Origin: Perna viridis
Lineage: Eukaryota
Length of the DNA: 64,000 bases
Assembly (NCBI GenBank): GCA_037379345.1
Contig: CM074523.1
Coordinates: 876,525 to 940,524 of the forward strand
Direction: 5' to 3'
Shown: positions 6,780-60,935 of the stretch, piece after piece
Position numbering within the stretch: position 1 is the first letter of the stretch
Layout: the number at the start of each line of letters is the position of its first letter
Notes under the pieces: generated by a model
Told to the model about the DNA's origin: nothing
The model's database searches: none
The model's input: only the letters and a program-made list of their open reading frames with translations
Translations under genes and position numbers: made by a program

Positions 6780-9556
6780 CCATCATGTACTAAATCAATT
6801 TATATCGATCGTTTGCATTCTTAAGCCTCAAAAAATTGCAAAGAGTAATCAAGTAACCAAGGTTATAGCGGTAATCAAAAGAATGTAATCCAGGGACAAA
6901 GACCAGACATGGAAGACAGACACACACAACAAAGAACATAAAGTAACTAAAATCATACATACAAAGTAACAAAATCAAATGAGCAAGTCGGACTCCACTA
7001 AAAACTGGGAGCATGGACCGGGTGCACCGGTAGGGTATGCGTCCTCTGCTTTTCTAGAAACACCCGCCGAGTTGCTCATAAAAAAGTCAAGTCCGGGGTA
7101 GACATACGAGAAAAGGAAACACTGACCCGTTGAATAAATCAGTTTTCATGGTGCAGATTGATACACAATAACGATCCACGAGTTCATGATGACGACCATA
7201 AAACTTCTGTAGTGATGACTTCAATCTTGTAGCAACATAACCCTGCCTGTTCCAGAAGCCTATTTGTTAGAGTTCTAGCGCTATACAAAAAGTCTGTGTA
7301 GTTTCGGCAAGCTCTGGCATAACGTTTGAGTTGTGATATGAACACTCCATACGCAGTTGCCGAAGGGATGTTGAAACAGATGAAAGGAAAGTTGACAATT
7401 TTGAATGAAATCTCATTACGTTTGTCGTAAAGTTTGGTCAATAGTTTTCCTTTACCATTTTTTAAAGATAATACGTCATCTATATAGCGAAAACTGAGAT
7501 TACAGGATCTAGCTAAACGATATTCTTTCTTTCGGATCAGATCAGCAAGTCAGCCTCATAAGAGTGAAGGAATAGGTCAGCAAGTAAAGGAGCACAATTT
7601 GTTCCCATTATAAGGACAGGTCGGATATCGAATTTAAACGTATCTCAACACAAGCTTATTGTTGTAAATGGTTAATAATATTTTGAACTCTTTGATTTAT
7701 TTTCAAATTAACCATTCTGCCTAGAAGGGCATTATAAAAACACTGAAATTCATGATGCATCGTAGCAGTGTGTAAGTATGCGTAAAGTTCAGGTTTGATA
7801 TCGGTTTACATGGAACACTATGATGGATAATTAACTCTCCGACATAATTGAGCAACAAGTTGTAATAGCTCCAATACTTTCTATGTTAAATGCAGCTATT
7901 TATAAGGCTCATAACAAAGTTTACATGAGTACACATGGTGCTGGAGGGGTTTCATAATGATGGACACCCTTTACATTAACTCGAACAAAAAATATCAACA
8001 TACCTTATGAGCCTTCTAAGAAAGAATCGTAAAATGAAAGTATCCAGGTACAGAAATTACTACTTTCGTTTAAAATTTAGCCATATCAAGGGCGTATATT
8101 TTTGTTCAGAATTATGCAAGCCTACACTTAGAAAAGAAACTGGAGTTTTAAAACTACTGCTAATTCAATCAACTTTTAGATGATACATCTACATCACATA
8201 GTGCAATATTAGGACTACTTCGTGTCATTTCGAACTACTTTCTTATATGTGCAGTCGACTGGTTCCCGAAATAGTGGTATTACAGCACTAACTTCTAGTT
8301 GACCTTTCCCAATCTATAAATTTTAAGTAGATATTCAATTTATCGACCTCCTGGTCGAAACTGTCTGTCAAAACATTCATTGAAATAAATACGTCCTAAG
8401 ATGCATGTTCCTCCTAACTAGCTACATTTCTCAGTTGCTACGCTTTATAGCTCAAGAGCTGCAACTTTTTGCATAGACGCCTATGGGTCATGTAAAAACG
8501 CTTTGGTTTCTGGGAACTTATCTCAGAGACACATACATTAATATAAACATCAACGTCTTTGAATATAATTTCAACAATTATGTCTAGTGCAGAAATCGCC
8601 AGCCATACACTTGTAAGGCCCTGGAGCACGTACATCTCTATTATCTTACATGTAACACATGGATAAAAATAGCCGAATGGAATGATTATTACAAAACGCA
8701 ATATCACTAAACCACAGATTGACACCAATTCCGAGAAATGCATTTCCAAAATTTCTATGTCATCGTCTAAGCAAAGTTTCATTTTTATTTGTCATCTCCG
8801 GGTTTCCGATATCACAAGGCAGTAACCGTAATAAATACACACGATACAGTAGTCCCTGCCTGGAACCTCTATATTTTTATACGTTTCTTGATTGGAACCA
8901 CTGCCCCACTTTTGTAAATATATAGATCCGCCAGGGCCTGCATGAAATATATGAAGACACTTTAAGACAGCGCTTCCCATTGGTACTCAGCATTCCTCTT
9001 CACATTTTATTTCTATGATCGATGGCTATTTACAATCTCGCAGGGTTTTCATTTCTAGTAAAATATCAAATGGTTTGTTAGGCGTCTACAGCTAAGAGTA
9101 AAGCATCTTGAATATATCGACAGCGAAGGATTGGTTTATTCGGCTAAACGCATAGAAATAAGCGTACTGATAAGGGGTAAGATGTCCACTACTTTTAATT
9201 GAATCGTTGTCAATACAAATGTACACATTAAACCAAATCATATTTAGTTTGTAATAAAATTGCTTATTGGGTTTTGTATATTGGCGTAAATTACATCGAA
9301 TTCAATATGATTTATAAGAAATACCTACCAAAGTGGACTTAACTATCTGCATTTCAGCCCTAATGGAGTATGCCATTGGGACTATTTTCCTGCTGTAGTG
9401 TTAGATAATTGCAGATGCTACATGTAACAAATCTCATGGCTCTGGCGATTGCTATATCAATTCTGATCTTAGATTTTAATCGATAAAAATGACTCATAGA
9501 AACTGCAAATGAGTCAGTCAACTTGGCACATAAAAGGAAGACAAATCCATAAAATC
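6780..9556 (+). repeat. Arm A of a diverged long inverted duplication (interrupted by the PLE at 6840-7612 and an extra block at about 7830-8270)
   Basis: Colinear reverse-complement homology to 17030-19015 in many blocks. Examples: 8790-8850 vs 17941-18000, 8850-8950 vs 17730-17836, 7625-7680 vs 18855-18905, 6781-6838 vs 18955-19013. Confidence 0.85.
6840..7612 (-). mobile_element. 5'-truncated, internally deleted Penelope-like retroelement (RT and 3' UTR)
   Basis: The minus strand reads MGTNCAPLLADLFLHSYEAD, then SFRYIDDVLSL (catalytic YIDD), then TKLYDKRNEISFKIVNFPFICFNIPSATAYGVFISQLKRYARACRNYTDFL, then GYVATRLKSSLQKFYGRHHELVDRY, with frameshifts. A T-rich 3' UTR follows. Confidence 0.88.
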
Positions 9557-10609
9557 TGTTTATTTTTATGGTTTACATATAAGACCATTTTTCTTGGTAT
9601 TTTCTCTTTGGTCCATCGTTAACAAATGTCAAAGGACCATTGATCCAAGAAATCTGGAATAAAAACTGATCCCTGGACAATGGTCATTACACTTTTCGTA
9701 CATAAATCATGGTGTAAACCAATGACCAGCCTTTAACACGGTTATTCTTAAATCCAGAGCAATAGAGTGATCTCTATAACTTACAAATGCACAACAATTG
9801 CAAATTACTTTTTTGTTCAAAATAAAAGGGCATTTTACCGGTATATTTTCTTTTTTTTCAACTTTTTTGTATAATTTTAAAGTACCATTTCTCTCATTCG
9901 TTTGAAATGCCTGTACAAAGTCAGGACCATTGTGGTACCAGCTGCTCTGGTGGCGTAACATCTATTTTGCCAGATCTACTTTGGACTTAACTTGATTATG
10001 AAACTTACAAATGTTCGGTATTTTTGCTGTTATCCTTATCTTCAACTACGTGAACAGACAGACGGACACAGTACCAAAACTTGTCAATGTACGAAATAAA
10101 ATGTAGATAAAATAAAAATACATTATACTTTTCTGTTTGCATGAAATTCATATATTAATGGTATTTATACATTGGTGGACCATATATTGTGTATTTCAGT
10201 GATTTAAATCTCGGTGAAAGATGAAAACTTTAAAAACATGTTTTCATTATGTATTGAAAACCAATATAAAGAAGTCGTTCCATATAAAAATGATACAAAT
10301 ACAGCTGTGATCGCCATAAAAACAGATTTAATTAAAGTTCAATTCATGTCCAAGGTTACTTTTAAAGGACGTGAAGTAGCTTCACTTGTCTGGGGAGTGT
10401 GCACTGATTTTCAGCTCGTTCTACACTAATGTTTAATGTAAAGACTAAGAGTAGAGAATAGTCAGACGAAGGGAAATCTTTGGACAAGACAATATCGGGA
10501 AAATCAAATAGCAAATATACGTGAACAAACAAGAAAATGCCTAAAAATACACACACGGAAACAACACTGAATATCAGGAATTACAGCAAAATATTCAAGT
10601 AGTGTGTGA

Positions 10610-10740
10610 AAGCTAGGGAACCAAGATTCTAGTGGAAATCAAAGTAATGTTGTCCAGCGATAAAGACTAGACATGGAAAGAAGACACATAAAACAAAGAA
10701 CATGAAATAACAGGTACAATAGAAACAAAAATAAATAAAA
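10610..10740 (-). mobile_element. 3' UTR fragment of the same Penelope-like family
   Basis: AACCAAG..TCCAGCGATAAAGACTAGACATGGAAAGAAGACACATAAAACAAAGAACAT aligns with 6855-6940. Confidence 0.6.
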
Positions 10741-10752
10741 CTACTACTTATA

Positions 10753-11180
10753 CCGTAAACAATCAAAGTTGTGTAACTCTCTCAATCGCATTTACGAAGT
10801 ATACAAAAATGGATGGAGCTGTTATGATGCTACATGATATCTTGTATATTATGTTGACAATAGGCTATACATGTATTTATATAGGTGCTAATTGTTTTTA
10901 TGGTATATTTTAAATATCTTATTAATAATTACATGTTTATATGTCATCAGCGAATACAAATAAGTTAAGATATTTAGAAAAGACTCTACATGTGTATATT
11001 GCAAACAAAATAATAGCAAGGTAAAATACCCAAACTTACAAACCATGAAAGGAAAATTAATGTGTCCTTCATCCGATTTGCACTGTCATTCAGGAGCTTA
11101 AAAATAGCATCATGACAGCTAAATTTTTGTATACTTCGTAAATGCGATTTGGAGAGTTACACAACTTTGATTGTTTACGG
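10753..11180. mobile_element. Tc1/mariner-type MITE, about 428 bp, about 58-bp TIRs, TA TSD
   Basis: The left end CCGTAAACAATCAAAGTTGTGTAACTCTC..ATCGCATTTACGAAGTATACAAAAAT is mirrored almost perfectly at 11123-11180. Flanked by TA at 10751-10752 and 11181-11182. Confidence 0.9.
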
Positions 11181-11213
11181 TAAAAGTCCAGTTGTGGAGA
11201 AGTAACGGAAATA

Positions 11214-11339
11214 TTGTTTGTTTGTTTGTTTGTTGGGGTTTAACGTCCGAGCAGCAATATTTCAGCTATATTCAGACAATGAACATGAAATGGATGATAA
11301 AGTGAACATGAAATGATAAAAAAAGGATGGGTCACAAGG
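11214..11339 (-). mobile_element. Heavily 5'-truncated SINE copy with 9-bp TSD
   Basis: The (AAAC)n tail and ATAGCTGAAATATTGCTGCTCGG.CGTTAAACCCCAA 3' end are shared with 22333-22460. TSD ACGGAAATA at 11205-11213 and 11340-11348. Confidence 0.8.
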
Positions 11340-14300
11340 ACGGAAATAAGAAGAAAATGCATCGTAGCCAACGGTATACATGTTAACTCAGCAAGGTAAC
11401 ACAAATGAACGGAAATAACAAGGTGATAAATCTACTGTTAGAATTATAACTCGGAGAATGAACTGAAACAAGGAGAAAAATGTTCCATATCCCAGGGTAT
11501 AACGAATGAACGGAAATAAGAAACATTTATTGTAGCCCGGGATATGAGAAAACACAGTCAATGTAAAACATATAAATTAACCAATTCCTGGCTTTGTCTA
11601 TTATAAAACCGTAAAAACTTCCGGCCAATGTGAAAGTCGACGTATTATTTAAGTAAATTAAAACTAAAAAAACAATATTGGATTTTTCGTGTACAGCCAG
11701 AGTAAAAAAGATTAACAATCAATTAATATATTTACCGAATCCGCGAAGAGCTTCCAGGTGAACAGACGGAAATATGTTTCATAAAGAAGTGGCTTGAGCA
11801 CTGAGTGTGGCAGTTGTGTAAAAGCTTTTATCTCTACATAGGAGATCTGTTCACTTTCATTCTCACTAAAAGGACAAATACTTCCGCGTTTCAGTGTATC
11901 CAATCTGTACGCATTCGTCTACGTACAAGTACATAAAGTGCATATTGGTGCATGAGCACTTGTAGTATGCAGATTGTTATGTCCGCAGTATAAATCTCAT
12001 GGTCACGTCAATTATAGCTACCACCATAACAATAAGTCAACAGAGAAGAACGTTAATTGGATCCGAGTTATCTACAAAAAAATCATCTTTTGACACTAGT
12101 TGAAACAAACAAGGCATTTATAGTATTTCAGTCCGAGAAACTTATATTTACCTAAGTACTAAATATAATAATGTGCACATGTGGGTATGTACGTTCAATT
12201 TGTTTGTCAAATTGCTTGGTTAGGTTATAATAAAAACTTCAAAATAAAATTTAGTATACATTCTTATTTCCAGAATTTGTAATTAAACTAACTTCCTCTG
12301 AGACACCGAAAATAATCTACTTTATTTTGTGGTTTTTATGACAACATGCTTCTCTTAAAAAAAAAGGGATTACATGTAGTCCCGGGAACCAGGATGGTTT
12401 TCCTATTACTTTTATTTTGAACTAAGTTACAAAATATGAATGTTTCTACATGTACTTTCGAAACATGATTATCTTGGGTAACCTGTTTTCTATTCCAAGT
12501 TTCAATTAAATCTGCTACGGATAGTGTTTTAGACAACAATGTAAATCTGCGCTTAAAAAATTTAAAAAATTAAAATATTTCTTTAAATGTAAGCATTCGC
12601 AAAAAATACTGCGATGGACATTCAAACAGATTGACGGTCAAAATGTACGCGTTGCACCTATATGTCGTAGAGGCACCGCTCAAATTAAAACTGATATCAT
12701 ATGACGCCTGATTGTGACTGGTCCGCAGGTACAAATTCTACTTGGACCATCTGTTGACCCGTGGTAACATGAACACCGTACTGCGAATACCATATTCAAT
12801 AAACAAAAACTAACTTTTTGAACCTTGGTTGACACTATGATGACCTTGACCCACCATATCAGTTAATTATTCATCATAATTTTAAACATCAAAGCTGCCC
12901 AAACGCTTAGGGTATTATAGTACCTATGGGAAAATCAATCAAACACTGGTTGAAATCATAATTTAATTATTTGTTCATATTTATTTGTATTTTATTCACG
13001 GTCGAGGAGCATGCAGCCATTAAAGAATCCCGTTAAAACATCTGTTGCGACCTTAATAATGTTAATCACTCAAATCTCTGATCGGAGAGGCTAAAAAATG
13101 GTGTGGTTCCGCAAACTGGTATCGAGTAAATTTCAAACCATAAGAAAAAAATGCAACTGCAGACATTGTGACGTTATAAGTTATTGCATGTTTTAAAACG
13201 TACTATATGCTTCAAATGACTCCCGTCACACTGGTTCATGTTCTCAAAATGGATGCTTCAACTATTGTAATCCATCAATGGCTTGGATTACGTGTAATAT
13301 ACTCCGAACAGTACATTTTACCAGTCGATCTACCTTTTTAGTCTCTTTGTGCAAATTAACACAGTTAAGCGTCAACCGTTAAAAAAGACTATTGTTCATA
13401 TGTCATGAAAAATATTACCATCAAGGACAGTTTTTGTGGTCAATTTCACAAAAGAAGTGATGTAAATTGCTTCATGTTTTAACGTAATGTTTAATGTCTT
13501 ATTTCATATTTAAATCATTTCGTGAGTTCGACCACAGATCCAAATATCTATCACTTTTTCCTAGTTCTTTGTCCCGTTCCATACTATAGTCCTGGCGCTG
13601 CCTTTCGAAGCCAGGTTAACACGGCCTTGACCTTTAAATACACAATCAAATGATCAAACACCGATGGAACAGTGATAAAACATAGCATAAATAAAGCATT
13701 GCCGTAAAGCACCCACATGAATTTAATTATATATTTATTCTTGAGTGTATAGACAGATTAACGAAAACCGGCTTTTATCACTAAAGCAAAAAATAGATTT
13801 CGCTTTTCATCGTTTGTTCATGACACAGCTAGAACGTGAGCATTAAATACGTGAGCAATATTAATTCATCGTTAATTTTAATTCGTTTGATAGAACAAAC
13901 GGAAATGTGAAGGGTTGGTATGTCTGCACCTAGATGTAAAACGGTTGTCATGGAACACAAACGTTTAGAAATCTATGACATTGTTGGGAATTATACAAAA
14001 AACAAAAATACGAAGCAAGGAAAATTATAAGTAATTTGAACACATAAAACCTAACTGTATGTCATGAAAATATAATGTTTTGTCATTATTGTTCAGATAC
14101 CAAAAAGAAAAAAGGCAAGACCTATATTTTCGCATAATAAAAATTTCATACTAGCTACTAGATGAAGAGATTTTAAGAAGGAGTGTGCTCATTTCATGCA
14201 CGAAATTGACACAATTTCCCGACAAAAATGGGAATGTTCCTACACCCTGCCCCTGGATTCGCCAGTGCCACATATATTGTATCCAAATGCCAAGCTACAT

Positions 14301-15038
14301 GTACGATTCAGTTATAAGTGCGTCATCAAAAAATGGTTAATGCATGCATGTTACAAACGGTGTGCAGAAAACGTGAAACATTACGCAAGATTCAACATGT
14401 AAAGATGGATGAAAAAAATCAAAACGTGAGTAATTCGATTTTATGTGTTTACAAACAATCACTCAGTGCATCTTTTGTTTATCAATTATGTAACGTTTGT
14501 AACATGGATAATACACGTGGGTTCAGTCGTCGTTTTTTGTCAAACGACCTTGACCTCGTTTAAGTACAAATTATAAACGTTCCAGATTCACACGTAATTA
14601 TCTGCCCTTGCCTTGACAATAGTAGGACGACTTATTACATGGACGAGCGACCAAGAACGGAAATTAATATCACATTACTTCACAAAATTACATAATAATA
14701 ATTATCCTCAAATTTACGGCAGTGTTAAAGGGAAACCACAACCACAAGCAATTGTGATAATATTGGGCGTAACGAAATAACACTTTGCACAAAGGACGCT
14801 CATCAAAGGGTTGCTCGATTTTTACAGTTGCGTAATTCGGTGTTTGTGTCCATTGTGAGAACTGTATACAAAATGGTAATTAGTTTGGTAATTTATTGTA
14901 AGTATTGCATGCCAACAGAATGACAATGTGATATTTGCTGAATGGACATGGAAATTTAATGTGTGCATGTACCGGACACTCAGTTTGATTGTATAGTATG
15001 TTGTAAATTTGTGTATAAATATTATATTGTTTAGCTTA

Positions 15039-15336
15039 GGTCAAATAAAATTATACTTCTGTTTCCTGTTAAATGCCACAAAGATGGGTCGATAAGTTGG
15101 GATTTTTTAATTTTATTAACTTACCCCCCCCCCCCCTAATTTCATAGAAAACAACTTTACAAAATCTTATAAACCACACGGACGTTGCGGAAACCGAAAT
15201 TTGAAAACCGTGATCTGTTAAATGTCGGGTCGTTTGATAGTATTTTTGTTGTTTGTTAAGTAGAAAATATATCAGTCGTGGGTCAAGGCATGAATCGGTC
15301 GGGTAACAGTAAAAAGAGATATAATTTCATTTGGCC
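15039..15336. mobile_element. MITE, about 300 bp, imperfect ~33-bp TIRs, TA on both flanks
   Basis: GGTCAAATAAAATTATACTTCTGTTTCCTGTTA on the left vs TAACAGTAAAAAGAGATATAATTTCATTTGGCC on the right. Confidence 0.7.
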
Positions 15337-16108
15337 TAAGTTAACCAATTTTCAATTCAGATAAAATGTAGACTGTTTGGATGTATGCACCGCATATTGA
15401 ATGTTGAGCAAAACGATTTCTTTTGTTGTTGTTTTATATTTGGGTGTTATGGGTGGATGTTTGGATTGTTATTTTTAAACATGCTGTAAGATATTGGGTA
15501 TATCATACTATTTACTATTGGAAGGATTGTCCAAGCAACATATCAAAAACCTTGATCCATTTACGAATTCAGTGCATTTATTAATCGTCGTAAAATTATT
15601 TGTTAAACATATGTTACTAACTGATACATTATAGATATGAACGCGTATACATGTAGTGAAAATATAGCTAGATTTGTATACCCGTACTCCATATTCCGAC
15701 CTTTCTTTGTTTCTTGTGAAATTCTGATATCATGCTTACAGCCTTAACCCATACCATCAAGATAAATAAAGCATTAAATTGTCGATTTCAGAAGAAGTAA
15801 ATGCTTTCCACACAATAACAATATGATAAATATCCATTAGCCTTGAGGACAGATTGTCAACTAGGTTTGATAATACCCAGGCAGAATACTTTAAATCCTT
15901 AAAGATTGTTGAGTCATGCATAGAAAACGAAAAGTTAGTAGGTAAGAAAATATGTCGTCAAGTCAGGACTAATCGTACCTCTAACTGAGGAGAATAATAG
16001 GATGTGATGATAAGATCTCGAACTTAAGTAAATAGTACATTAAGTAACATGAGCGAAAGGTTACATTAATAGTCTGCATTGGCGGATTCACGGAGAGGGT
16101 TCAGGGGT

Positions 16109-16435
16109 TCACCTCACCTATCCTCTTCATTCCCAGTGGGACATAAGGCCATTACAAGATCCCGCCATTTGTCTCTGTCCTGGGCCAAGTGTTGAGCTTC
16201 GCCAAGGCTGTAACCAAGTTCTTCTAGCTCTGCCAGTACTGTTCTCCTCCAGGTGGTGCGAGGTCTGCCCGGTTTCCTCTTCCCAGGTGGTGTCCATCGT
16301 AGGTCAATTTTTTGGCAGGCGGTCATTTGGCATTCTGAACACGTGGCCTAGCCATCTGAAGCGTCTCTTTTTAGGTCTGTTGCAAAGGAATGGCATTTAC
16401 ACATTCTTAACAGGTCTTCGTTTGTTATCTTCTCT
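16109..16435 (-). mobile_element. RTE-clade LINE, 5'-truncated 3' end
   Basis: The minus strand encodes KRRRFRWLGHVFRMPNDRL, then (frameshift) KIDLRWTPPGKRKPGRPRTTWRRTVLAELEELGYSLGEAQHLAQDRDKWRDLVMALCPTGNEEDR*, the typical RTE ORF C-terminus. A short (AGGTG)n tail follows, with GGGGTT on both flanks. Confidence 0.9.
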
Positions 16436-17029
16436 GGGGTTGCCGTACCTTTTCTAATATTTTGTTAATTTCGTACAAATTTGGACACAAATGAGCAAAT
16501 AAAAGCCCTTGTAAAAACTTTTGACGGCAACAAATATGACAGGTAGTGACATAGCCTGGTTTGAACTGTATCTGATGAATAAGTAATGTCTTTGTGTTCT
16601 TTGTGCATCCCACCCAATACACAAAGTGCCAAGCAATGACATAAAACGGGATTTAACTACTTTAAGAAAAATCAGACTTTGAAACAAAGTACATAAGAAA
16701 CCGTGCAGCACTTTACAGAGTAGTTGCAGTGTATATGTATCTGTATATTATCAGAACTAAGGAGTATAGACCAGACTTACAATATTGTCTATGAAAAATG
16801 AATAACGATTCCATTTGAAAACACTAAGACTACAAATGAATAATTTAGGGCTATACATACACCTACATGCAATTACATGTATGTCAAAATTCAATTTTTT
16901 TTCTAACATACTTTTTGAAATCATTCTGCAATTCTGTAGATATGAAGTATAGTGGTCGTTTCAATTAATGAACGCCACTTTTAGTGAATATGGTTGGTCA
17001 GATCGGTGGGCGTTTGAAATACATATTTA

Positions 17030-22000: not shown

Positions 22001-22332
22001 AGTCAAAACCATAGACAACAGATGAAACGTACAAAATCATTTGAAAACACATCAACACGAAAAACAACATATTTCGGAACACTTTAAATTTAAAGTACAT
22101 TTGTAAACTAATGCAAGAATATACAGGGGAAGAGATAGAGACTGAACAAATTTTTTCCATGGCCTATGATTACAAATTACATGTGTCTTGTTGTTAGCAG
22201 CAGTAACATTTTGCTCTTCCTGCGTACATATACATGTACATATACATATACATGTACATACATGTGAATGATCTTACCTATAATCTTAGGATCGACACCG
22301 GAAGTGTCTATAACAGAGGCGGACATGATTCT

Positions 22333-25502: not shown

Positions 25503-25642
25503 TACATATAACATACATGTAATGTACATATTAAATACATGTACTGTATATATCAAATACATGTACTGTACATATAAAATACATGTACTGTACATATTAA
25601 ACACATGTACTGTACATAGTACATACATGTTCTGTACATATT
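25503..25642. repeat. Minisatellite, 22-bp unit, about 6 copies
   Basis: Unit AAATACATGTACTGTACATAT(T/A/C). Confidence 0.85.
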
Positions 25643-29546: not shown

Positions 29547-29692
29547 GCCGGTTAGCTCTGAATGTAGATATATACGCGAAAACACTTAGGAGGATAAAAT
29601 ATATACAATTTATACAATGTTTCTTTAAAATTTTGTAGATTATTTCATGCTATAGCTGTGCAGAATATTTTAATGTCTGCTACGTGTTAAAA

Positions 29693-49500: not shown

Positions 49501-50939
49501 AGTCTGCGTCTCTAGACTGGTAGACAATTGATATATACATACATGTACTTCAATATACGATAACCAAAATGGTAAATTTAGAATCCTCTACAAAATTAAT
49601 AATATCAATTTGACACCTCACATAAATGAGTTATCTGACCCCTGTATGACATTTCAATATGACCACCCATGACTTTAAATAATAATTTAGTTATTAAAAT
49701 GTAGTACATATTAATTTATCATAAAAAGTAGACAGATTGCTGCCAATATCTGACCTTTGACGTTTGAAATGAACAAGTACTCAAGTCACATGTTTACAAG
49801 TGTTGACTTCACTATTGCAGACTACTTATAGGATTAAGATTTTTCCACTAGTTTTATCTCTAAAAACAGGTATTAAACACAACATGTTTGTCGTTGGTTA
49901 ACGCTCTACATCCACAAGGTATCATACTTGATCCACTTTCTACAAATCTCCTTCATTCCGACCTTGTGTCTATATTTAGAATGATTAGCCTTCCGGTCAA
50001 GGAACATCCATCATCTGGACAGATATAAAGTCTCAATATTTTCGTTTTTCTTTATTAACGAACATGTAACCAACCACTTGGTGGCGTCTTCTTCTGTCTC
50101 TGAAAAAATGATAGCAATCTAAGTTGGACTTTGGACTCGTATAAAGTTTCTTCATTTAGACAGTTCGTTTTACTAAAATAAAAAAAGAAAACAACATTTA
50201 ACTTGAAGTAAACAAACTTAAAAAAGGACAGTTTTTTTTATCCCATCTAAACCTAATAGTGTACTTCTTAAGGCTGTTTATTTCCATTTAAATGTATTTT
50301 GAACTATAGTAAACCACAGTACATGTACGTATGCATATGCAACAATGAGGAAGGTTTACAGAGTTGCAACAAATACATGAAAATTGCATTAAATAAAAAC
50401 CTTGCTGAACTTATTTGTGCATAATTTTTCGAATATGTTATTATTACATAAATGTACAAGTACATGCATATATTGTATATGTATATTGTTTTCTTGCATG
50501 TTATAAGTAGCTGTCTTTGTAAGAATCATGCAAAGTCTGAAAAATGTGATACACTACAAAAAAGGCTACATATTTTTATTTTTGTAATTAAGTTGTTTTA
50601 TGGGTCTATACTATGAAATGTGTAATTATTCATTCGAATTTGCCTGCTCTTAGGAGATGATCCACATTGAAAATCCAGTAGATTCTATTGTATTTGAGAG
50701 TTGTCTCCCTTAATTTTGAAATCTATGGTACATTCTATATAATTTTCATTTCCTTAGAGCACGGGTTATATGAAAAACCACAGGTTAATGTCTGTTTAAT
50801 ATGACATTTCAAACAAAATATCCAAAAAAAATAAAAATATGTAGGCTTTTTACCCATGAATCACATTTTGCATGATCCTTAGCTGGAGTGCTACATAATT
50901 GATCTTTTCCATAGCCTAAAAATTACTTTACTGTTTTAG

Positions 50940-51314
50940 ATGATGGCCGACAGATACCGAAGGAGAACCAAGATGAACAAAGCGAACCTTCAGATGTGGT
51001 AGTACCTTCTCGATCTCAGACGCCAACAAGAAGCCCCTTGTTTGAGCCCCCAGATTTTCTAGGGCCGATGAAAACGCAGCACGAAACTAGATCTCAAAAT
51101 AAATTTAAACAGACTATATTACAAAGATACCTTAGTGATACATATGGCCACCATTCGGGACATCCTCCTGGCAGCCTCGATATGGATGTTTCGGCTTTCA
51201 CGAAAACCAGATCGAGGCGACCTTCCGGTTCCATTGGATCACGCGATTATGAGGAAATGTCGACGTCATCGGGTATTTCGCTGAATGATAGCCATAGCTA
51301 TACGTTTTACGATG
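50940..51314 (+). CDS. Mkx: Mkx coding exon 3
   Basis: Acceptor ttttag, donor G|gtgagt, phase 1 to phase 1. Encodes KFKQTILQRYLSDT (compare vertebrate KYKSSLLNRYLNDS) and SGSIGSRDYEE (compare SGSFSSNEFEE). Confidence 0.93.
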
Positions 51315-54300
51315 GTGAGTGTTTAGTACGCTGATTTTTTTTTTACATTGATTTATTAGCCCCCACCCACTCTCTAATGGAAAAAAATAAACAGTACGTC
51401 TTCTTGAGAAAATTACACTAACGGAACATATTTAAAAAGGTGTAGGCCTGCGTAAGGAGCTGGTCGCAATTTTTTCTTTATTTTATGTGCAAAATCAGCA
51501 TGCAGTAAAATTTTACACGTACCGCTGCAAATTCATTTTTTGACTATTCGATATATATTGTGCACATCAGATTTTGATTTATGTGTTTCTATTGAAACTG
51601 TCTTTATTTTCCTTCTGCACTTACATGAAACAAGATGACCAATTCACTGTAATGGGTATCAGCTGTAGAGAATAAATTATCTTCATTACATCAGCAATGT
51701 TAAAAGTTTAAAGAGGGGCATGTCTGTTGCTTCCTCTGCAATCAGTCACGTCAGCCGATCGCTGTTAACGGATGAAATATGATAAACCGCACGAGAACTT
51801 GAAATAGATACTGTATTACACAATTTCCTTTGCATTCAAAAAGAAAATTTAATATCATAATGGACAAACCCGATACTTGAAATGGATGTGCAAATTTACA
51901 ATTTATAGAATTATAAAAGATGTGATTATAACGATCCACAGGGTGGAAATAGATGACATATGTTGCACGTTGTATATTGTAAGGTATCAATTTATGTAAC
52001 TAATGTTTTATGACCTAAAATACCGTAAAATTCAGATGGCAGGTCAGGACTGTCATACACATTCTTTTACGTCCCAAAGCAGTGTGTGATTTTGGTTACA
52101 TTGCCTTAGACCGGTTACATAAAATGTACCAGAGTCTGTTTGTAAAATACGTGTCTAGTCTTATTGGAATTTCAGTCATTTAACATGAATAACCCTTTAT
52201 TTCTGGTAAATTATACACTACCCTATAATAAAATTGATAAATTAAAAGCTGTTTCATGTATTTGAGACTTAATTTAGATTTAAAAGTACCGATGAACACA
52301 TATTTAATTAAAAGGTCACGATTATTTTCACCATGCCTTACTTATTTGAACAAAAGCAACTTTGTTAAATCTGAAAGTTTGTGTTGTTTGTATTTTTATT
52401 ATAAACTATCACGTTTATGCTCTTGACGGTAGTATAGGATATTTTCATGGGCAAGTGTTTGTTTAAAATGGAAACGTACCTCTTATCTTCCATGCTTTAA
52501 AATCAATAGGGGGAAATGTGGGCTTGTTAAAGGTACGCATTCAAATCCTGTTATAGTAACATGTAAATTGTAATTGATGTCAGGAGGGCGGACCTCGAAT
52601 AATATCTACATGATACTAAGGTATTTTTAAGGTACATTCACCGATGGGATCTATTGTAAGAAGCAAACATTTAATTTTTATCTGAGATACATGTACATTG
52701 TGTATGAAATTAATTTAGAATTTATTTTCTTTTACGTTATTTTCCTGTTTCGTTTGGCATAATTGGTCATCTTAATATACTTTGTGTTCTAATTCTGATT
52801 CGAAGACTTTAGAATTCAAGGCTAATATGAGCTGACTTGGATTCGACTCCTGTAATAAAAAAAAAGATAATTCGAACACTGAATTTGGAACATAGAACGT
52901 TTAGAGGTTCGATGTCCGCCTATCTCTTTTAACTTTAGTGCCATCATTGACGTTATCGCAATACGCCATTTTGTTCTTCAGTTACTTCAAGTGTGTATCC
53001 TTATAAGATTTCACATAAACGCAAAAATGTCAAGTTGACCACCAATGTTTATCACATTTTAATATATTGGACCTTTATAAATTTTGCTTTATGATTTCTC
53101 CCAATCGGTAAAGTACATCTGGCCCATTTACTATACATGTAAGATGGTTTATAGTTCGTATAAAACCCTCATTCAATTTCCCGACACGTAAAATTGAACA
53201 AAGACTCTTTCCCTCAATCAATATTTAATAGAACTATGAAAAGACTTCTTGCTGCGTTTAATATCACCAAGTTATAGTGTTTTACCCAACAATCGTAGGA
53301 AGTATAGCTCTACAATAATTAGAAATAAAGTACAGTTACTCGTAGAAATCAGGCGGGTGTCAGCTTCGAATATCTAAAACCAAGTAAATAATTACTCTTC
53401 AAAGTGTATAGTCATACTTTGTTTGAATATAATGATATTCATTTACGATTTCATATTTTATTTTCTGATTATTTTGCTCTGAGGATCATTTTTTAAATTT
53501 AATCATTATACCGTAAGCAATTGTTGATAACTTTTTCTCACTTCAGTTGATGAATAAAATATCTTTTCATATGTTTCATAAAGAAGGTGTGAAATAGAAG
53601 TGGTTTAGGCGTACATTGTATTTTTTTTACACCAAAACCCTTTAAATGAATTTTGCAGCTGCCAAAAAGGAATTGAATTGAATTGAATAATTTACATAAC
53701 AAAACTATAAAGTACCTGGTATCTATAAAAAGCAGTAGATAAAAATGATCGAGCACTTAAGTTGAGAAAAGTCAGCTTCTGTGTTCACAGGAATATAACT
53801 TTTAATAAATGATATAAAATTCAGTGTGCAGAAATCTATTGACGTATTTAAAAACGTTTGAAAACCAGAGAGAATAAAATTCACAGTCAGTGACGCGTGC
53901 ATGTAAGATTTGAAAGGCTTTTCAAAAGCTTAGTTCGATACTTAAACACATGCGAGAAAAAAAAGATATTTTTAATTAAATAAATGACAAAGCTCAATAG
54001 AGCATTTTTGTTGAAAGAGAAAAGTTCTATAAATGGAGATTTATTTCTAATATTGGTAAAACTGCGTGAAGGCAATGCAATGTTGTGTTTTATGATGAAA
54101 CAGACCGTAAAAAGCTGTTAAAATACAGCAATAATGATAGGTTCCTCAGGGAAAATGATACCAACACTACCATCAATTAGATTACTCAATATTTCATTTC
54201 TGTGCCAGTTCGAATGGCTAACAGCAAAGCATTTTTTTCTATTGAAGTATAATGTATCAGATTTTATGTAAAAGGTCCCGACAAGTATAAACATTATATC

Positions 54301-54751
54301 ATTTGGACCGGCTTTTAGTACCATCCTTTATAAAAACACAAGTATTAGATTGCACGCTGTAGGGTCATTGGATCGATGGACATCGCCTATTATATATTAT
54401 AAATTATATACATATGCAATAACAGAGATGAATGAAAGAAAAATCTTGCTGAATATGTATACTGTTAACGTTAATTCACCTTCGGGTATAAATAAGCAGC
54501 TGCTCATGAATGTTTCATTTTGACTTTGAACATGAACTGAAGATGTACATGTATACATGTATATAGTGCTCACCCCATTAGTTCGTTACTGGTATCACCA
54601 AAGCAACCATTCCCCTGTTTTTTAAACTTGAAGGTTTTATGGTATTTGTTGTTTATGAGGCTTATTTATGAGTTATTTTATTTTGCGATTGATAGATCAC
54701 TATGTTTTGATGTGTATATTCCTCTACTGACCTTATTTGTTTCTTTTTCAG

Positions 54752-54815
54752 ACAATGCTGATGATTTGGAGTCAGCTGCTCGGCGCAGGCGCATCTCAGG
54801 GGATATTCATGGCAG
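54752..54815 (+). CDS. Mkx: Mkx coding exon 4 (D-NADDLESAARRRRISGDIHG-R)
   Basis: Polypyrimidine tract plus cag acceptor, donor AG|gtcagt. Its 64 nt convert phase 1 to phase 2, exactly what is needed to join exons 3 and 5. It is a GC-rich island in AT-rich intron. Confidence 0.85.
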
Positions 54816-55875
54816 GTCAGTGAAATAATTATCCTGTCGAAACGCTGTCAATTTGGCAGCATTATTAACTGCACCCACTTAAAGGCTTGAATAAGCGAAT
54901 CAAGATATCCATTTACACTTGTTGTCCAAGAAAAAGTTAGGGTTTTATATTGTCAAGAGTGACTCTCATCTGTTTACCGAACCTACCTTGTACATGTGGA
55001 TGTACAAAATGTACATAGTATGGTGTACTTTCAATTAAAAATATGCCCCACAATGGAACGCCGGGTTTCTTGTAAGTCAATTACAAGCTACGAGTCAGGT
55101 TTTTATACACATACATGTGTATCTAGCTAATACGTAACTACATGTACATGATATGCCAAAACTAAGATTGAATAACATTGGAACAATAAATATTCACTTA
55201 TATTGACGTCTCTGAGAGTATACGAGTTCTCTTTTAAGCTCGGAAAACTTGATAACTATTTCTTTTATCCATGATATATCACATGGACCAGACTTAGCCA
55301 CGTTATCTGCATTTATCGAATGTGCATAGAAATTATATCCATCATTTTTGTACTTTCTATCCTTTGGGAATTCACAAAGTATGCCCGGAACTTTCCGCTG
55401 TCCGTCGGTGACTCAGAAATTACAATATCGTAGCGTGATCAGAAAGTGGAATCGATAAGTAAATATGAACACAGCCGCAAAAATCATGTAACCTTTTCAC
55501 TTCCTATTGTTTATACTTTTATATGTTAATTATCAGACCTGTTTGATTGACGTTCCGTGTCAAACGGAGACGCATTTTGAATTTATGAACGCCAGGACGA
55601 CGCTATCTATATATAATACTAAAGATGATTCTTCCTATTTTGTCGCGTTTGTTCAGGAATAAAATGTTATAGGCATACAGTAAACCTCAGATTCAATAAA
55701 CTCATCAAAATGAAGTTATGCATTTGTACACATAAATAATACAATGTGTATATATACTTTAAGTCGTTTGCTTAAATTCAAGACTTCTTTTGGGTATACT
55801 AAAGCCAAGTTGCGATTTTATGCTATGCATTTTGTTGATATTCTTATTTTAACTGTTATTTTTATTCTTTTTCAG

Positions 55876-55963
55876 GAATCAAGATGATATTCATCTTAAA
55901 GAAATAAGTGCTGTCATGGCGCTGACCTCACTCGCAAGATCTCGTAGATACCCAATAATGTAG
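55876..55963 (+). CDS. Mkx: Mkx terminal coding exon (NQDDIHLKEISAVMALTSLARSRRYPIM*)
   Basis: Acceptor tttttcag, stop TAG at 55961-55963. Matches the C-terminal Mohawk motif (vertebrate DDTYWKEINAAMALTNLA). Missed by the ORF track. Confidence 0.9.
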
Positions 55964-56208
55964 TTATGTGATAGTCACGTGGTATCCTCCATATTTAATG
56001 CATTCCGTATGCATCTGTGCCTACTATAAGAACTGGAGGGATATATATTGTTCTTAATTGTTTAAATGTTACGATATCTGCAGGGAAAGTCTTTAAAATG
56101 TTTAGATTTTATTTTTAATGTTACTCGTCAAACGCATTTGAGCATGCGCAATGAATGTTGTTTTACAAGTGTGTGAATGATTGACAAAAATAGTGTGGAT
56201 GGGTACGG

Positions 56209-56252
56209 AATAAATTTTTATTGTTATAGCTAATGATGTGTTTTGTTTTATG
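56209..56252 (+). terminator. Mkx polyadenylation signal with downstream GU/U-rich element
   Basis: AATAAA at 56209-56214, about 245 nt after the stop codon, followed about 25 nt later by TGTGTTTTGTTTTATGT. Confidence 0.6.
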
Positions 56253-58239
56253 TCGCCTTGTCACCAAAATATCTCTTTGGACAGTTGCTATGATGAACAG
56301 TTTGCACCAAAACTGTATTAGCATTTAACAATTTAAAATTATTGACTAAATGCACATGCTATGCATACACATGACGGTTTCAATACAGCTTGATGTGCAT
56401 AATAATATGGTGTGTAAGTCTCGTCACGTGACTCCGTGGTTTCACGAGAAGGAGACCTAATCTACCATTCAGATGCATGGATATTTGTTATTAACAGGGC
56501 GTTGAGATCAGTATTAAAACCTTAATTGTGTGCATAAATACTGATAAAAATTGCATAAATATTGAATAAATTACCTCTGTCCTGAAACAAAATACAAACC
56601 TTCAATCCTTTTATCACATATTTAGAGATGGCTTTGAGTTACTTGATTCCAAAATTGATTATGGAGCAGATGTTAACAAATAACAACTGGCATATAAACC
56701 TTCCAGTGTTCTTAAATTTTACAACAAAAATATGTAGTACGTTTATCAATTGTAGGTAAGTGTACCAATAAGAAATTAAAAACAGAATTTATAGAAAACT
56801 TTAATAGAAAATCTGATCTTTCATGGCTACAACTGATGGAGCATAGGCCAGAACCATTATATGAGCATATGTCCTTTTCCATAAACATTAATTAGGCGCT
56901 TTTTTAAAATACCCGCTGATAGAAAATATATTTAATGGATTCAAACTGGCGGCATAGGAAGTTCTTTCACTGTTTCTGTTGAATTATTTCTTTGTAATGT
57001 GAAGACATCGACATACTTTGATCACAGACATGAAAAAGATACGAAATTTTGTAGGATTGCCATGCGATGTTTTATATTTTAAAAAATCTCAAAAAAGCAG
57101 TTGGAATATTGCTCAAGTATTGCCTGAATACACACCAAATTTCTGTCAATGCAGAAATGATCGAGAACGGCGTTTTCACATTTTCTAGCTGCATGTACAT
57201 AAAGTTGGTTCAACAGAAGCATATAAATCGCTTCTACAATTCTCTGCATCAAATACTTTGTCGATTGAATAGCGCACATAATATAATGTACATGTCAACC
57301 TATGAATGGTAAAGCTCCTGCAGAATTCGTCATACCATTAATTTTAAGAAAAACAGTTGTGTTGTATACGCATTCTCCTTTACAATTGGCACCCGCAAAA
57401 AAGAAACATGCAATTCTGTATTTTTATCTGCATCAGATGCCAACTAAACCTATCCAGCCTCAACATAAAGATATAGCGAATACAAACCAACTCGCTGATT
57501 GGTTAAGGTTACGCTCCGTAAATATAGTTCAAACAGGCATACATTTTTGAAGCCAATAAAACGTTCCGTTCTCCTTAGATTTTCTAATTTCCCTTTAACT
57601 GTTGATTTTTTATGGAACGAACAACGATTGCGACCCTAGCTTGACCTTTTTCTGTCGAGATGGAATAAGTGTAATCAGTCAGAATCGCTCCAGATTGCGT
57701 TTCCTTTTAATGATAATTTTCATTTATAACAGGAAAATAGCTCTTAGCGCCACTTCCGCCATTCGGAAGTTGCTCTATCAAGCTGGTGCTTGGAAACGAT
57801 GTCGGCGTCAAGTAGACGCTTAACTTTAAGTTACCTGATGGCCCTGAATTGATATCACCGCTTTGTTAAAACTCAAGGATTAATGGTTGATATTATCAGG
57901 AAAAAAAACATGAATAGAACAATGATCAATCATGGCAGATACTTAAAACAAAAATATTTCATCGAATGTTTTACAACATAGGAACCATTCGGAAACAGGA
58001 AGCCGCCAAAGTCGCTAGGGTCAGTAGCTTTAAATAGGACAGGCTTACAAATATGGAAATACCAATGATCCAAATATCCAGGGGCGAGAAAAGAGTCGTT
58101 GCTATCACGTATACTTCTATCTGCATGTGCTAGTAATCGGCATTAATTAACGACTACCAAATTCCGAGTCTGCCTTAATATGAAAGCCCAGCATCGAACA
58201 AACGCGGTTGAGGCAAACACGCAACCACAAATGCTTCAC

Positions 58240-58330
58240 TCATTTTTATATGCTTTTCAGACAGATGGATTATGGTATACAGGTGTCCGTCCATCTGTCT
58301 CTTACACTTCGCATTATAACTAAGCAATGC
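58240..58330 (+). mobile_element. Possible Helentron/HINE-like terminal fragment
   Basis: TTTTTATATGC..ATTATGGTATAC..GTGTCCGTCCATCTGTC resembles the T-run plus GTCC/GTCT microsatellite end of such elements. Confidence 0.3.
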
Positions 58331-60243
58331 TGCTACCATTTTTGAGGAACATTGGTTTATAGTTTCTTTTAACTAGTGTGAGCTGACTTTCGATTTTTTG
58401 AATCCCAGACTTTTTTTGAATTATGGGAATTAATATATACAAAAAATAGGACGATTTTCTGTTTTTGGGCAAGAAATCAAAAACCTTTGCAGCGATTTCA
58501 GTGTGTTTGTTTTTATTGATGTAAGCGCCCTTTCATATTTCACAGTTTTCAGATTATAACTCGGTCGTGGTTTGATTCAAGCATTTTCATAAAAGTTTAG
58601 TAAATATTATATTACTATTGGTGTTATAGCTACCTCTTAAATTGGTAATAAATTTATTTGCGTTTTTGTTTTTTTTCTTCATAAAAATGGGGGGAGGGGG
58701 GTCAATAATTACACAATAATTTCAAAACACTTCGAACAATTTAAAAAAAAATGTGGAATTGGTTTTTCTTTTTTCTACTTTCTTTTCTACTTTTTTAATT
58801 TAAGCTACTATTTTTTATACATGTGTGATTGTGTCAAATATCTAAACATAACTGAAATGAGAACTGTATCAAGCTTCAATTGTATGCCCATATTTGCCTG
58901 AACTGTTCAGTGTATGACCTCTGTGGTCGTATTTAGCTGCGTTCCGCTACGCGAAGCATTTTATTGGACTTTTACTAAAAAAAAAACAATAAATAAATAA
59001 CGCTTCCACCAAATGCCATGAAATTGTGAATTGTTTGTTTACTTTGATCTAGGCTTTACATTTTTATTATTCATATACTTTGTCTATCTGTTTCTTATCA
59101 TGTTATTTTTTAAAAGTTTTATTGCGAGTATTTACATTATTTGACCGCTCCCATTCTGTCCAAAATATTATCCTGGCTTTAACTTTTAATCACAATCATG
59201 CAAAATTCAGAGCTGTATATAGTTTGAATATTGTGTTTATACATGTATTTACCCGATCCGTTAATATATACAGGGAGTTTTCATCCTACTTGATTTCAAT
59301 TGTAACATATACATGTGATACGATAAACTTACTATATCTTTTTTTGGTAAAACAAAACTAAGACTTGGTGGTATCGTTGAAATATTGTGAATATCAGACC
59401 AATGTCATCCACGTTTACAACAAAATGGTAACTCAAACTACACAGTATAGAATATGCAATAATAGCAAGCAGGTTATAGAAACATTTGTACATAAGGAAA
59501 AAAACACAGTAGCATGTACCAACAGTTGGAGTATAGAATAGATATAGCAGCAAGGTAAGCATCCAAATTTTAATAGACATATTCGATCTGAGTTGCTCTG
59601 CACATGTAATTATTATGGAATGCATACTGTCACGTGACTACACAAGTTTGCATATATATGTCAAACCTTTCATCGTTGACTCCATACATCGTGTTGAAAC
59701 TTTATCTTTTACACGAATATTTTAATTTATTTTTGTATGTAATAAGACCCTCGGAGAAATAGTTGGGTCTTTGGTTTAGTCGGAAATGGCGTGACATACG
59801 GTAGACAGAAGTGTATAGCTATCGTTAATGTTCCAGTCTGAGATGTAACTCTGGCAGACCATATTAAGGTGATATTAATTAAATTTTTACTGATGTGACA
59901 GCATCACGTTTCTGTAGAAAAAGTTTACAGCATGTTACATTTGTACAATTCGTCCGGATGGAGTTTAAATTTTTAAAGAGCAGCACGTTCAACTCTTACA
60001 CAACCCTCAAACATTGATGAAAGTGCTACACTGGCAAGACACGAAGACATGAAGAGGAATTATATGAGTTTATGTTATCAGCCTTTGAAATTTAACTAAT
60101 ATGTAACTTTTAATATAATTAAAATTATCAATATCATGACCTATTACAATACAGAGACTATATGGTCAAGGTGAAAAAAAGTAAAACCCAAATGGCTTAA
60201 AATAGAAATACATGTAATAGGAAACCTTATGAATCATCAATCA

Positions 60244-60350
60244 TGTACAGTTGGTCACGTATCTACCCCAAATAAAACATTGGTGTACAATTGGGCACGT
60301 ATCTACCCCCAAAAAACCTTGGTGTACAGCTGGGCATGTATCTACCCCAA
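60244..60350. repeat. Tandem repeat, about 40-bp unit, 3 copies
   Basis: Unit TGTACA(G/A)(T/C)TGG(T/G)CA(C/T)GTATCTACCCC... Confidence 0.8.
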
Positions 60351-60626
60351 TTATCTTTACTAGTATAATGACAGTAAATATGACATTAAATAACCCCCTC
60401 CGACCCCCTCCCAGTAAAAATTTCTGGCTACGGGCCTGTACTTGAAAGACTTCAACATTTCATATTTCTATTGAGTCTAACGGGTTATGTCTGTATTAAC
60501 CCCCCGGTCCTCCAAAAAAGATAAAAAAAAAACAAAAAGAAAAACTGAACATTATTACTGAAGTTTAAGGCATTTGTATGATTGCTATCAATTCTATATT
60601 TATACCTTAATTTAAAGAATTTTCTT

Positions 60627-60935
60627 AGTGGCAACTTAGTGGTACATGTATGAGCACCAGTGGTAAACTTACATGTAGTGGTACATGTATGAGAACCAGT
60701 GACAAACTAAGTTGTACATTTATGAGCACCAGTGACAAACTTAGCGGTACATGTATGAGCACCAGTGGTAAACTTACATGTAGTGGTACATGTATGAGCA
60801 CCAGTAAAAACTAAGGTACATGTATGAGCACCAGTGACAAACTAAGTTGTACATTTATGAGCACCAGCGGTAAACTTACATGTAGTGGTTCATGTATGAG
60901 CACCAGTGATGAACTTACATACGGTGGTTCATGAA
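60627..60935. repeat. Minisatellite with 33-bp and 39-bp unit variants, about 8-9 copies
   Basis: GTGGTACATGTATGAGCACCAGTG..AAACTTA, with or without an added CATGTA. Confidence 0.9.

What the first reader, a model, noticed from the sequence alone, without database searches (positions are those of the whole stretch)
8647..60677. TACATGTA palindromes look like Tc1/mariner excision footprints: five internal TA versus TACATGTA pairs
Seen: TACATGTA occurs about 20 times by eye in the first 7 kb alone (five of them in one minisatellite), against roughly 2-3 expected in the whole window from base composition. Five sites have an internal homolog with plain TA. (1) 28171-28178 GCAG-TACATGTA-GTCC vs sister units GCAG-TA-GTCC. 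(2) 60670-60677 AAACT-TACATGTA-GTGG vs AACT-TA-G(T/C)GG. (3) 18243-18250 AATG-TACATGTA-CGTGTCTCT vs arm A AATG-TA-TGTGTCTCT (about 8525-8541, minus strand). (4) 9419-9426 TGC-TACATGTA-ACA vs arm B TGC-TA-ACA (17271-17278, minus strand). (5) 8647-8654 vs arm B TA-ACACATGG (about 18118-18128). Established: Tc1-family elements insert at TA, end in CA..TG, and TACATGTA (TA+CA+TG+TA) is a classic Tc1 excision footprint in C. elegans. Inference: the motif is a fossil record of very frequent cut-and-paste events, acting as a 6-bp insertion mutator at TA sites. The CA..TG-ended MITE at 39863-40064 is the kind of donor expected.
Basis: partly seen in the sequence, partly recalled or inferred. Interest (0 to 1): 0.78.

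Follow-up and report, generated by a model that had tools for sequence, protein, structure and literature searches.

The report
Transposon excision scars flood mussel genome
The 8-letter palindrome TACATGTA is about 30 times too common here because the six letters CATGTA have been inserted again and again at plain TA sites, most likely as the scar left when Tc1-type jumping genes cut themselves out, which gives this bivalve genome a readable record of past transposon traffic.

Summary
TACATGTA occurs 88 times in the window against about 2.8 expected, and 232,827 times in the 723-Mb genome (about 7-fold). No other 8-mer palindrome or TA-NNNN-TA word is enriched. Other first-stage readers noted the same excess in other windows of this genome. 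None of those notes had been followed up.

I tested polarity on an abundant repeat family with 8,162 standard copies. In a 34-nt stretch with six TAs, 13 of the 19 listed 6-nt insertions are exactly CATGTA at a TA. All six TAs are hit, with no CATG nearby, so these are derived insertions, not deletions or slippage.

The same stretch also shows four TA-to-TACAGTA/TACTGTA events, which is the canonical Sleeping Beauty-type footprint. It shows junction variants (TACAATGTA, TACAGCATGTA). Three copies are interrupted at the same TAs by sequence starting CAGT.

The window's MITE belongs to a TA|CAGTG...CACTG|TA family, and the genome holds more than 100 Tc1-type transposase matches, many with intact frames. 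Decayed versus perfect copies fit steady production.

Excision footprints are the best explanation (about 0.75). No allelic occupied/scar/empty series could be obtained. TACATGTA is not the classic Tc1 scar: that scar is TATGTA or TACATA, and it is rare here.

The parts
382..63571. All 88 TACATGTA sites of the window (full list). 77 are solitary, and most lie in sequence with no repeat partner in my 204-kb sample.
   Evidence: 88 observed against 2.7-2.9 expected. Only 17 of the 88 lie in sequence with any repeat partner.
28171..28178 (.). CATGTA insertion at the TA of one unit of the 38-bp minisatellite (27344-28487).
   Evidence: Sister units read GCAG-TA-GTCC. Five partner alignments show the 6-nt gap.
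60670..60677 (.). CATGTA insertion at the AACT-TA-GTGG site of a 33-bp unit. It was copied with the ~102-bp higher-order repeat to 60775-60782 and 60877-60884.
8647..8654 (.). Probable CATGTA insertion in arm A of a ~1-kb inverted repeat (8380-9460 against 17240-18410, about 70-83% alike).
   Evidence: It is a plausible 6-nt gap, but the alignment there is loose.
18243..18250 (.). A 6-nt difference between the two inverted-repeat arms. It is ambiguous between a footprint and a tandem ATGTAC duplication.
9419..9426 (.). A TACATGTA site claimed to have a TA homologue in arm B. The alignment does not support this.
39863..40064 (+). Old, decayed copy of a Tc1/mariner-type MITE. The family consensus ends are TA|CAGTGAAACCTGTCTAAAC...GACAGGTTTCACTG|TA. 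It is the kind of donor whose terminal CA and TG match the scar.
   Evidence: At least 40 scored genomic matches at 74-88% identity, and several copies are flanked by TA on both sides.
6840..7610 (+). Window copy of the abundant retroposon-like family that I used as the ruler for insertion polarity. It carries no footprint itself.
2390..2608 (.). 34-bp minisatellite whose ancestral unit already held TACATGTA (5 of about 6 units). One old scar was amplified.
25502..25643 (.). 22-bp minisatellite with TACATGTA in four units.
34193..34206 (.). Double scar TACATGTACATGTA. The same form is at 34614-34627, 43808-43821, 44882-44895 and 48419-48432. Two abutting scars lie at 54546-54561.
   Evidence: Five doubles were observed, against about 2.6 expected if the TAs of an existing scar are hit at the window's average rate per TA (my arithmetic).

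Best explanation
TACATGTA is a repair scar. Shown: at ordinary TA dinucleotides, the six letters CATGTA (equivalently TA + CATG + TA) have been inserted repeatedly and independently. The insertions occur in unique DNA and inside copies of older repeats, at a roughly steady rate over a long time.

Inferred: each scar marks a place where a Tc1/mariner-superfamily element with ends TA|CA...TG|TA inserted, duplicating the TA, and later cut itself out. The transposase leaves two-base 3' overhangs (CA on each flank). The germ-line end-joining of this animal usually keeps and fills in both overhangs, giving TA-CA-TG-TA. Less often it produces the three-base products TACAGTA or TACTGTA, or adds a base (TACAATGTA).

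Because elements leave much more often than they decay in place, scars outnumber resident elements. The scar has become one of the two most over-represented 8-mers (second in the window's table) and the main kind of 6-nt insertion.
For: Excess:
- 88 against 2.7-2.9 expected in the window.
- 232,827 copies in the genome, about 7 times the roughly 33,000 expected. The reversed word occurs 94,142 times.
- No other palindromic 8-mer or TA-NNNN-TA word is enriched.

Polarity and specificity:
- In a family with 8,162 standard copies, I searched genome-wide for +4 to +30 nt insertions in a 34-nt stretch with six TAs.
- 13 of the 19 listed +6 cases are CATGTA at a TA. These represent 11-12 independent events, and all six TAs are hit. 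The rest are tandem duplications, A-runs and one TACGTA.
- A second search anchored on one TA gave 8 independent CATGTA events, and a third gave 13 events on two chromosomes.
- Scar-bearing copies do not cluster on a family tree.

Transposon signature:
- Four TA-to-TACAGTA/TACTGTA events occur at the same TAs, plus the variants TACAATGTA and TACAGCATGTA.
- Three family copies are interrupted exactly at these TAs by sequence starting CAGT. One of them resembles the MITE end CAGTGAAAC.
- The resident MITE family has TA|CAGTG...CACTG|TA ends.
- There are 113 matches to the Tc1-type catalytic domain PF13358, many with uninterrupted 348-460-aa frames.
- Flank preference is weak and symmetric (A at -3, G at -1, C at +1, T at +3), as expected for a dimeric enzyme.

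Age:
- The excess of one-mismatch variants over the excess of perfect copies is 1.10 in the window and 1.07 in other DNA. A steady birth-and-decay model predicts 1.09.

Published basis:
- Tc1/mariner elements leave 2- or 3-base 3' overhangs, and the scar is overhang plus duplicated TA (PMC3878927, PMC7827188).
Against: - No locus was seen in all three states (occupied, scarred, empty). The occupied copies are paralogues, and their far ends were not seen.
- TACATGTA is not among the footprints reported for Tc1, Tc3 or Sleeping Beauty in the papers I read. The model therefore needs a lineage-specific repair outcome.
- The window holds 88 scars but only one decayed donor, and no intact TA|CAG...CTG|TA element.
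- Two 98%-identical 64-kb copies differ by 155 indels, none of them CATGTA. About 2.4 were expected under a steady rate, so this is only weak evidence.
- The four-fold higher density in this window than in the genome is unexplained.
Confidence: 0.75

Rival explanations
1. The scar comes from an unrecognised TA-targeting element whose ends read CATG...CATG and whose transposase leaves four-base overhangs. These overhangs are self-complementary, so they re-anneal and ligate exactly, as piggyBac does at TTAA. That would give one uniform scar with no polymerase step.
For: The scar is very uniform, and the 4-nt products typical of Tc1 are rare. Minos, a Tc1-family element, is said from my memory (not checked here) to leave 6-nt footprints through four-base overhangs.
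Against: A scan of 186 kb for TA|CATG...CATG|TA inverted-repeat elements found only pairs explained by the motif itself. Among family copies in which a TA is followed by CATG, no recurrent element end appears. In contrast, CAGT-ended interruptions do occur. The variants TACAATGTA and TACAGCATGTA look like untidy joining of separate CA and TG ends.
Confidence: 0.1
2. A process unrelated to transposons, such as an unknown nuclease or repair pathway acting at TA, inserts CATGTA.
For: The link between scar and element is circumstantial. Donors are scarce in the window.
Against: No known process inserts a constant non-templated hexamer. The inserted letters are exactly a duplicated TA plus the terminal dinucleotides of resident elements. 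Canonical transposon footprints C(A/T)GTA occur at the same TAs.
Confidence: 0.08
3. Replication slippage or growth of a (TACATG)n microsatellite produces the motif.
For: Five double units are present in the window. Pair (3) can be read as a tandem duplication. 771 GTACATGTACATGTAC sites occur genome-wide.
Against: 77 of the 88 sites are solitary. In the family test the insertions fall at TAs with no CATG nearby, such as AAAGTAACT and AACTAAAA. The number of doubles is close to what re-hitting a scar's own TAs predicts.
Confidence: 0.04
4. The motif is a selected binding site, or an assembly or sequencing artefact.
For: Its core ACATGT resembles some factor-binding cores (from my general knowledge).
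Against: At 1.4 per kb in non-coding DNA it arises by insertion inside dead repeat copies. It decays at the neutral steady-state ratio. It was amplified within minisatellites. A 5.9-kb stretch holding 14 sites is held at 0.79-0.92 of its sampled words by runs of several independent studies.
Confidence: 0.03

Closest known systems
Sleeping Beauty / Frog Prince canonical footprint TAC(A/T)GTA
   Same: Duplicated TA flanks the terminal bases of a CAG...CTG-ended Tc1-family element, and the break is joined by end joining. This exact 5-nt insertion also occurs here at the same TAs (4 events).
   Different: Here it is the minor product. The main scar keeps two bases from each end (CA + TG) instead of three overlapping bases, and it is not among the eight footprints listed for Sleeping Beauty.
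Tc1 and Tc3 footprints of C. elegans (TATGTA / TACATA)
   Same: TA target, CA...TG ends and two-base overhangs.
   Different: The worm product is a 4-nt insertion in which the two overhangs overlap. Here these words are only 1.2-1.7 times expected. No TGTA insertion was seen among the 100 listed family insertions, and one was seen in a young SINE.
Genome-wide excision surveys in rice (O. sativa against O. glaberrima, PMC4423477)
   Same: They use genome comparison to read DNA-transposon excisions as a force that creates small indels.
   Different: In rice only 8 of 94 excisions left a clean scar, and the rest carried deletions or filler. Here one uniform scar dominates, and it is frequent enough to distort the k-mer spectrum of the whole genome.
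piggyBac seamless excision at TTAA
   Same: A uniform, sequence-defined outcome of excision.
   Different: piggyBac restores the target with no added bases. Here six bases are added.

Membership tests
Tc1/mariner-superfamily excision footprint | Lies at a TA, which ends up duplicated on both sides of the added bases. | tested here: met
   Relative to a family consensus of 8,162 copies, TA becomes TA-CATG-TA at all six TAs of the test stretch.
Tc1/mariner-superfamily excision footprint | The bases between the two TAs are the terminal bases of elements resident in the same genome. | tested here: met
   The MITE family of window 39863-40064 has ends TA|CAGTG...CACTG|TA. CA + TG = CATG. CAG or CTG gives the 5-nt variants seen.
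Tc1/mariner-superfamily excision footprint | A transposase of the superfamily is present, and plausibly was active. | tested here: met
   113 matches to PF13358, many with open frames of 348-460 aa and no stops, some in several equal-scoring copies. Activity itself was not tested.
Tc1/mariner-superfamily excision footprint | The same site is found occupied by an element in some alleles, scarred in others and empty in others. | tested here: inconclusive
   Only paralogous copies could be compared. Three copies are interrupted at the same family TAs by CAGT-starting sequence, but the far ends were not seen.
Tc1/mariner-superfamily excision footprint | Scar sequence equals one of the published footprints (TATGTA/TACATA for Tc1 and Tc3; TAC(A/T)GTA for Sleeping Beauty). 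| tested here: not met
   The dominant scar, TACATGTA, is absent from the lists in the papers I read. The published forms are minor (C(A/T)GTA) or rare (TGTA) here. This bears on which repair route is used, not on the TA and end-base logic.
Excision in an experimental assay | Mobilising an element yields the scar. | not testable with these tools
   Needs a bench excision assay.
Microsatellite slippage product | The new unit arises next to an existing identical unit. | tested here: not met
   Insertions fall at TAs without neighbouring CATG. 77 of the 88 window sites are solitary.

The most novel reading that the evidence does not exclude
This bivalve genome carries a steady-state fossil record of more than 200,000 germ-line excisions of Tc1-like elements, written as one uniform 8-bp palindrome. 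Its end joining keeps both two-base overhangs. Excision scars are therefore the main source of 6-nt insertions and a measurable mutation class, at roughly 1-3% of the per-base substitution rate at each TA. From this record, past transposon turnover, regional hopping and the germ-line repair mode can be read directly from a single genome.
Probability: 0.55. Interest if true: 0.72.

Novelty: new variant of a known kind. Interest (0 to 1): 0.62.

Why it matters
Excision footprints are usually studied one locus at a time in the laboratory, and in genome comparisons they have looked untidy and rare.

Here a single clean scar is common enough to be one of the two most over-represented 8-mers (second in the window's table) of a 723-Mb animal genome. 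That makes several things measurable from sequence alone:
- how often cut-and-paste elements leave compared with how often they stay;
- how steady that traffic has been;
- which regions are hot;
- which end-joining product the germ line of a mollusc prefers.

It also identifies a specific, predictable class of small insertions. Indel models, alignment tools and population-genetic scans in bivalves should expect this class.

Tried and rejected
- Read laying for haplotype or congener alleles. No allelic or outgroup test was possible.
Local scripts (k-mer counts and self-BLAST inside run_python) did read the whole window file.
- Comparison of two 98%-identical 64-kb copies on contig C1: 155 indels, none CATGTA. 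The divergence is too small to be decisive.
- A young SINE (window 22326-22902) as ruler: only 1 CATGTA and 1 TGTA among 29 insertions, so it has low power.
- A pattern with trailing Ns returned no downstream letters. I repeated it with loci.
- Searches for occupied sites were swamped by common substitution variants of the family (CATACAGTAAC, CATACATGCAAAG). Only the first 100 rows could be read.
- Scan for TA|CATG...CATG|TA elements: nothing beyond motif self-matches.
- Scan of the window for intact TA|CAG...CTG|TA elements: none.
- Metagenome scans for related bivalve DNA: none, then one 1-kb contig that I did not use.
- Literature: no paper linking TACATGTA to footprints or reporting its genome-wide excess. 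Plasterk 1991 is not held.
- General hairpin (P-nucleotide) palindrome formation was rejected because no other palindrome is enriched.
Full report
**1. The observation**

TACATGTA occurs 88 times in the 64-kb window. Dinucleotide-preserving shuffles give 2.74 +/- 1.66, with a maximum of 7. A dinucleotide Markov model gives 2.9. Among 8-mers seen at least 15 times it ranks second in fold excess. The first is a word from a 17-bp minisatellite.

No other palindromic 8-mer and no other TA-NNNN-TA word stands out. TACATA, TATGTA, TACAGTA and TACTGTA are only 1.2-1.8 times expected.

The sites sit in varied contexts. Only 17 of the 88 lie in sequence that has any repeat partner in my 204-kb sample.

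Genome-wide there are 232,827 copies in 723 Mb, or 0.32 per kb. That is about 7 times the roughly 33,000 expected from the window's composition. The reversed word of the same composition occurs 94,142 times. The window is thus about four times denser than the genome average.

Earlier notes of this scan call the genome mussel-type or bivalve, and several first-stage readers flagged the same motif in other windows. None of those notes had been followed up.

**2. The five pairs**

- Pairs (1) and (2) are clean 6-nt differences between minisatellite units. The three 39-bp units of pair (2) descend from one event.
- Pair (5) is plausible.
- Pair (3) can equally be a tandem duplication.
- Pair (4) is not supported by the alignment of the two ~1-kb inverted arms.

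**3. Polarity and specificity**

This was the key test. An old, very abundant retroposon-like family has a copy in the window at 6840-7610. I chose a 34-nt stretch of its consensus that holds six TAs, bracketed by two 12-nt anchors.

Genome-wide, 8,162 copies have the standard spacing and 177 copies carry an insertion of 4 to 30 nt there. The first 100 of these are listed.

- Nineteen of the 100 are +6 cases. Thirteen of those are exactly CATGTA inserted at a TA. These represent 11-12 independent events after merging one local duplicate and one possible shared origin.
- They fall at all six TAs, including AAAGTAACT and AACTAAAA, where no CATG is nearby.
- The other six +6 cases are tandem duplications, A-runs and one TACGTA.

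An independent search anchored on one of these TAs returned 24 places. Eight carry independent CATGTA insertions and one carries CAATGTA. A third search with only the left anchor shows 13 independent events on contigs C1 and C2 alone, including one double. On a tree of family copies the scar-bearing ones do not form a clade.

So the TACATGTA state is derived by insertion. The process does not depend on neighbouring sequence, and slippage is excluded as the main source. In this AT-rich stretch, footprint-type events are about 17% of all listed insertions of 4 nt or more and two thirds of the listed 6-nt ones.

**4. Link to transposons**

- In the same 100 rows there are four 5-nt insertions that turn TA into TACAGTA (three) or TACTGTA (one). 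There is also one TACAGCATGTA.
- C(A/T)GTA is the published canonical footprint of Sleeping Beauty and Frog Prince (PMC3878927; bioRxiv 10.1101/659086).
- Three family copies are interrupted exactly at these TAs by foreign sequence starting CAGT. One reads CAGTGAAAC..., like the MITE end described next.
- The feature at 39863-40064 belongs to a MITE family whose better copies read TA|CAGTGAAACCTGTCTAAAC ... GACAGGTTTCACTG|TA. One copy (L039) is followed directly by TA-CATGTA.
- The genome has 113 matches to the Tc1-type catalytic domain PF13358. Many have uninterrupted frames of 348-460 aa, and some occur in several equal-scoring copies.
- Flank preferences around scars, compared with all TAs, are weak and mirror-symmetric. 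A at -3, G at -1, C at +1 and T at +3 are favoured, and T-TA-A is avoided.

**5. Age and rate**

The excess of one-mismatch variants, divided by the excess of perfect copies, is 1.10 in the window and 1.07 in 176 kb of other DNA. A simple model predicts 8/(7+1/3) = 1.09. The model assumes scars are born at a constant rate and each of the eight positions mutates at the same rate; this is my inference.

The family test gives about 21 to 23 events in about 8,400 copies with six TAs each. That is roughly 0.04% per TA in copies that differ little from the consensus. This is within about two-fold of the rate implied by the genome-wide density under the steady-state model (my arithmetic).

Two 98%-identical 64-kb copies on C1 show 155 indels and no CATGTA event. 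About 2.4 were expected, which is compatible.

At the family TAs, scars outnumber occupied copies by roughly seven to one in the part of the lists I could read. This fits elements that leave long before they decay.

**6. What is different from the known**

The papers I could read say otherwise:
- Tc1 leaves TATGTA or TACATA in 73-78% of events (bioRxiv 10.1101/2022.08.01.502254).
- Tc3 leaves the same two words, and Sleeping Beauty leaves eight listed footprints that do not include TACATGTA.

Tc1/mariner excision leaves 2- or 3-base 3' overhangs. TA-CA-TG-TA therefore means that both two-base overhangs were kept and filled in, rather than overlapped.

Whether this reflects the host's end joining or the transposase's cut geometry is not known. 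A rival model is an unseen element with CATG ends and cohesive four-base overhangs. It found no support in the scans I could run.

In rice, clean excision scars are the exception (PMC4423477). I found no paper reporting a genome-wide excess of this word or of any footprint in bivalves.

**7. Limits**

No allelic or outgroup evidence exists.
Local scripts did read the whole window.
Regional density around the window and the far ends of the interrupting sequences could not be examined.
- Lists from pattern searches show only the first 100 rows.

**8. Verdict**

The excess is real. The motif is a derived 6-nt insertion at TA. The best explanation is a Tc1-type excision scar of an unusual, uniform form, produced steadily and on a very large scale. 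I rate it a new variant of a known kind and of moderate to high interest.

Noticed in passing
window 22326-22902: 3'-truncated copy of a young, very abundant SINE-like element about 580 bp long. Copies are 92-95% alike. This copy carries an internal 90-bp tandem duplication at 22453-22633 and is flanked by a 12-bp direct repeat, GGACATGATTCT.
   Followed up: partly
window 6840-7610 and 1222-1663; C1:70-140 kb: Retroposon-like family with a fixed end (AAAGAGTAATCAAGGGAACC...) and variable truncation at the other end. At least 8,000 copies genome-wide, and 15 or more copies within 70 kb of contig C1.
   Followed up: partly
G000 C1:70-134 kb against C1:157-220 kb (L001-L014): Two collinear copies of about 64 kb, 98% alike, 87 kb apart. 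This is either a recent segmental duplication or an uncollapsed haplotype. Indels between them number about one fifth of the substitutions (155 against 770), and most are in homopolymers.
   Followed up: partly
window 1-64000 against the genome: Scar density per TA is 1.46% in the window, against about 0.5% in other sampled DNA. TA density is the same, so this is a regional hot zone without an explanation. The window lies 0.9 Mb from the end of contig C13.
   Followed up: no
window 62343-62938, 32106-32334, 27344-28487: Three minisatellites: a 17-bp unit x35 (AGGACATCATATAATAG), a 25-bp unit x9 at 98% identity, and a 38-bp unit x30.
   Followed up: no
L049 and L056 (family copies on C3 and C7): Single repeat copies carry two separate CATGTA scars within 30 nt. 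This hints at local clustering of events.
   Followed up: no
window 382-398 and 2219-2235: A 16-nt inverted repeat, GTACATGTACAATGTA, 1.85 kb apart, each arm including a TACATGTA. It could be chance or the ends of something.
   Followed up: no
G000 C5:41349690-41376683: Tandem array with a period of about 2.6 kb in which each unit holds a stop-interrupted fragment of a Tc1-type transposase domain.
   Followed up: no
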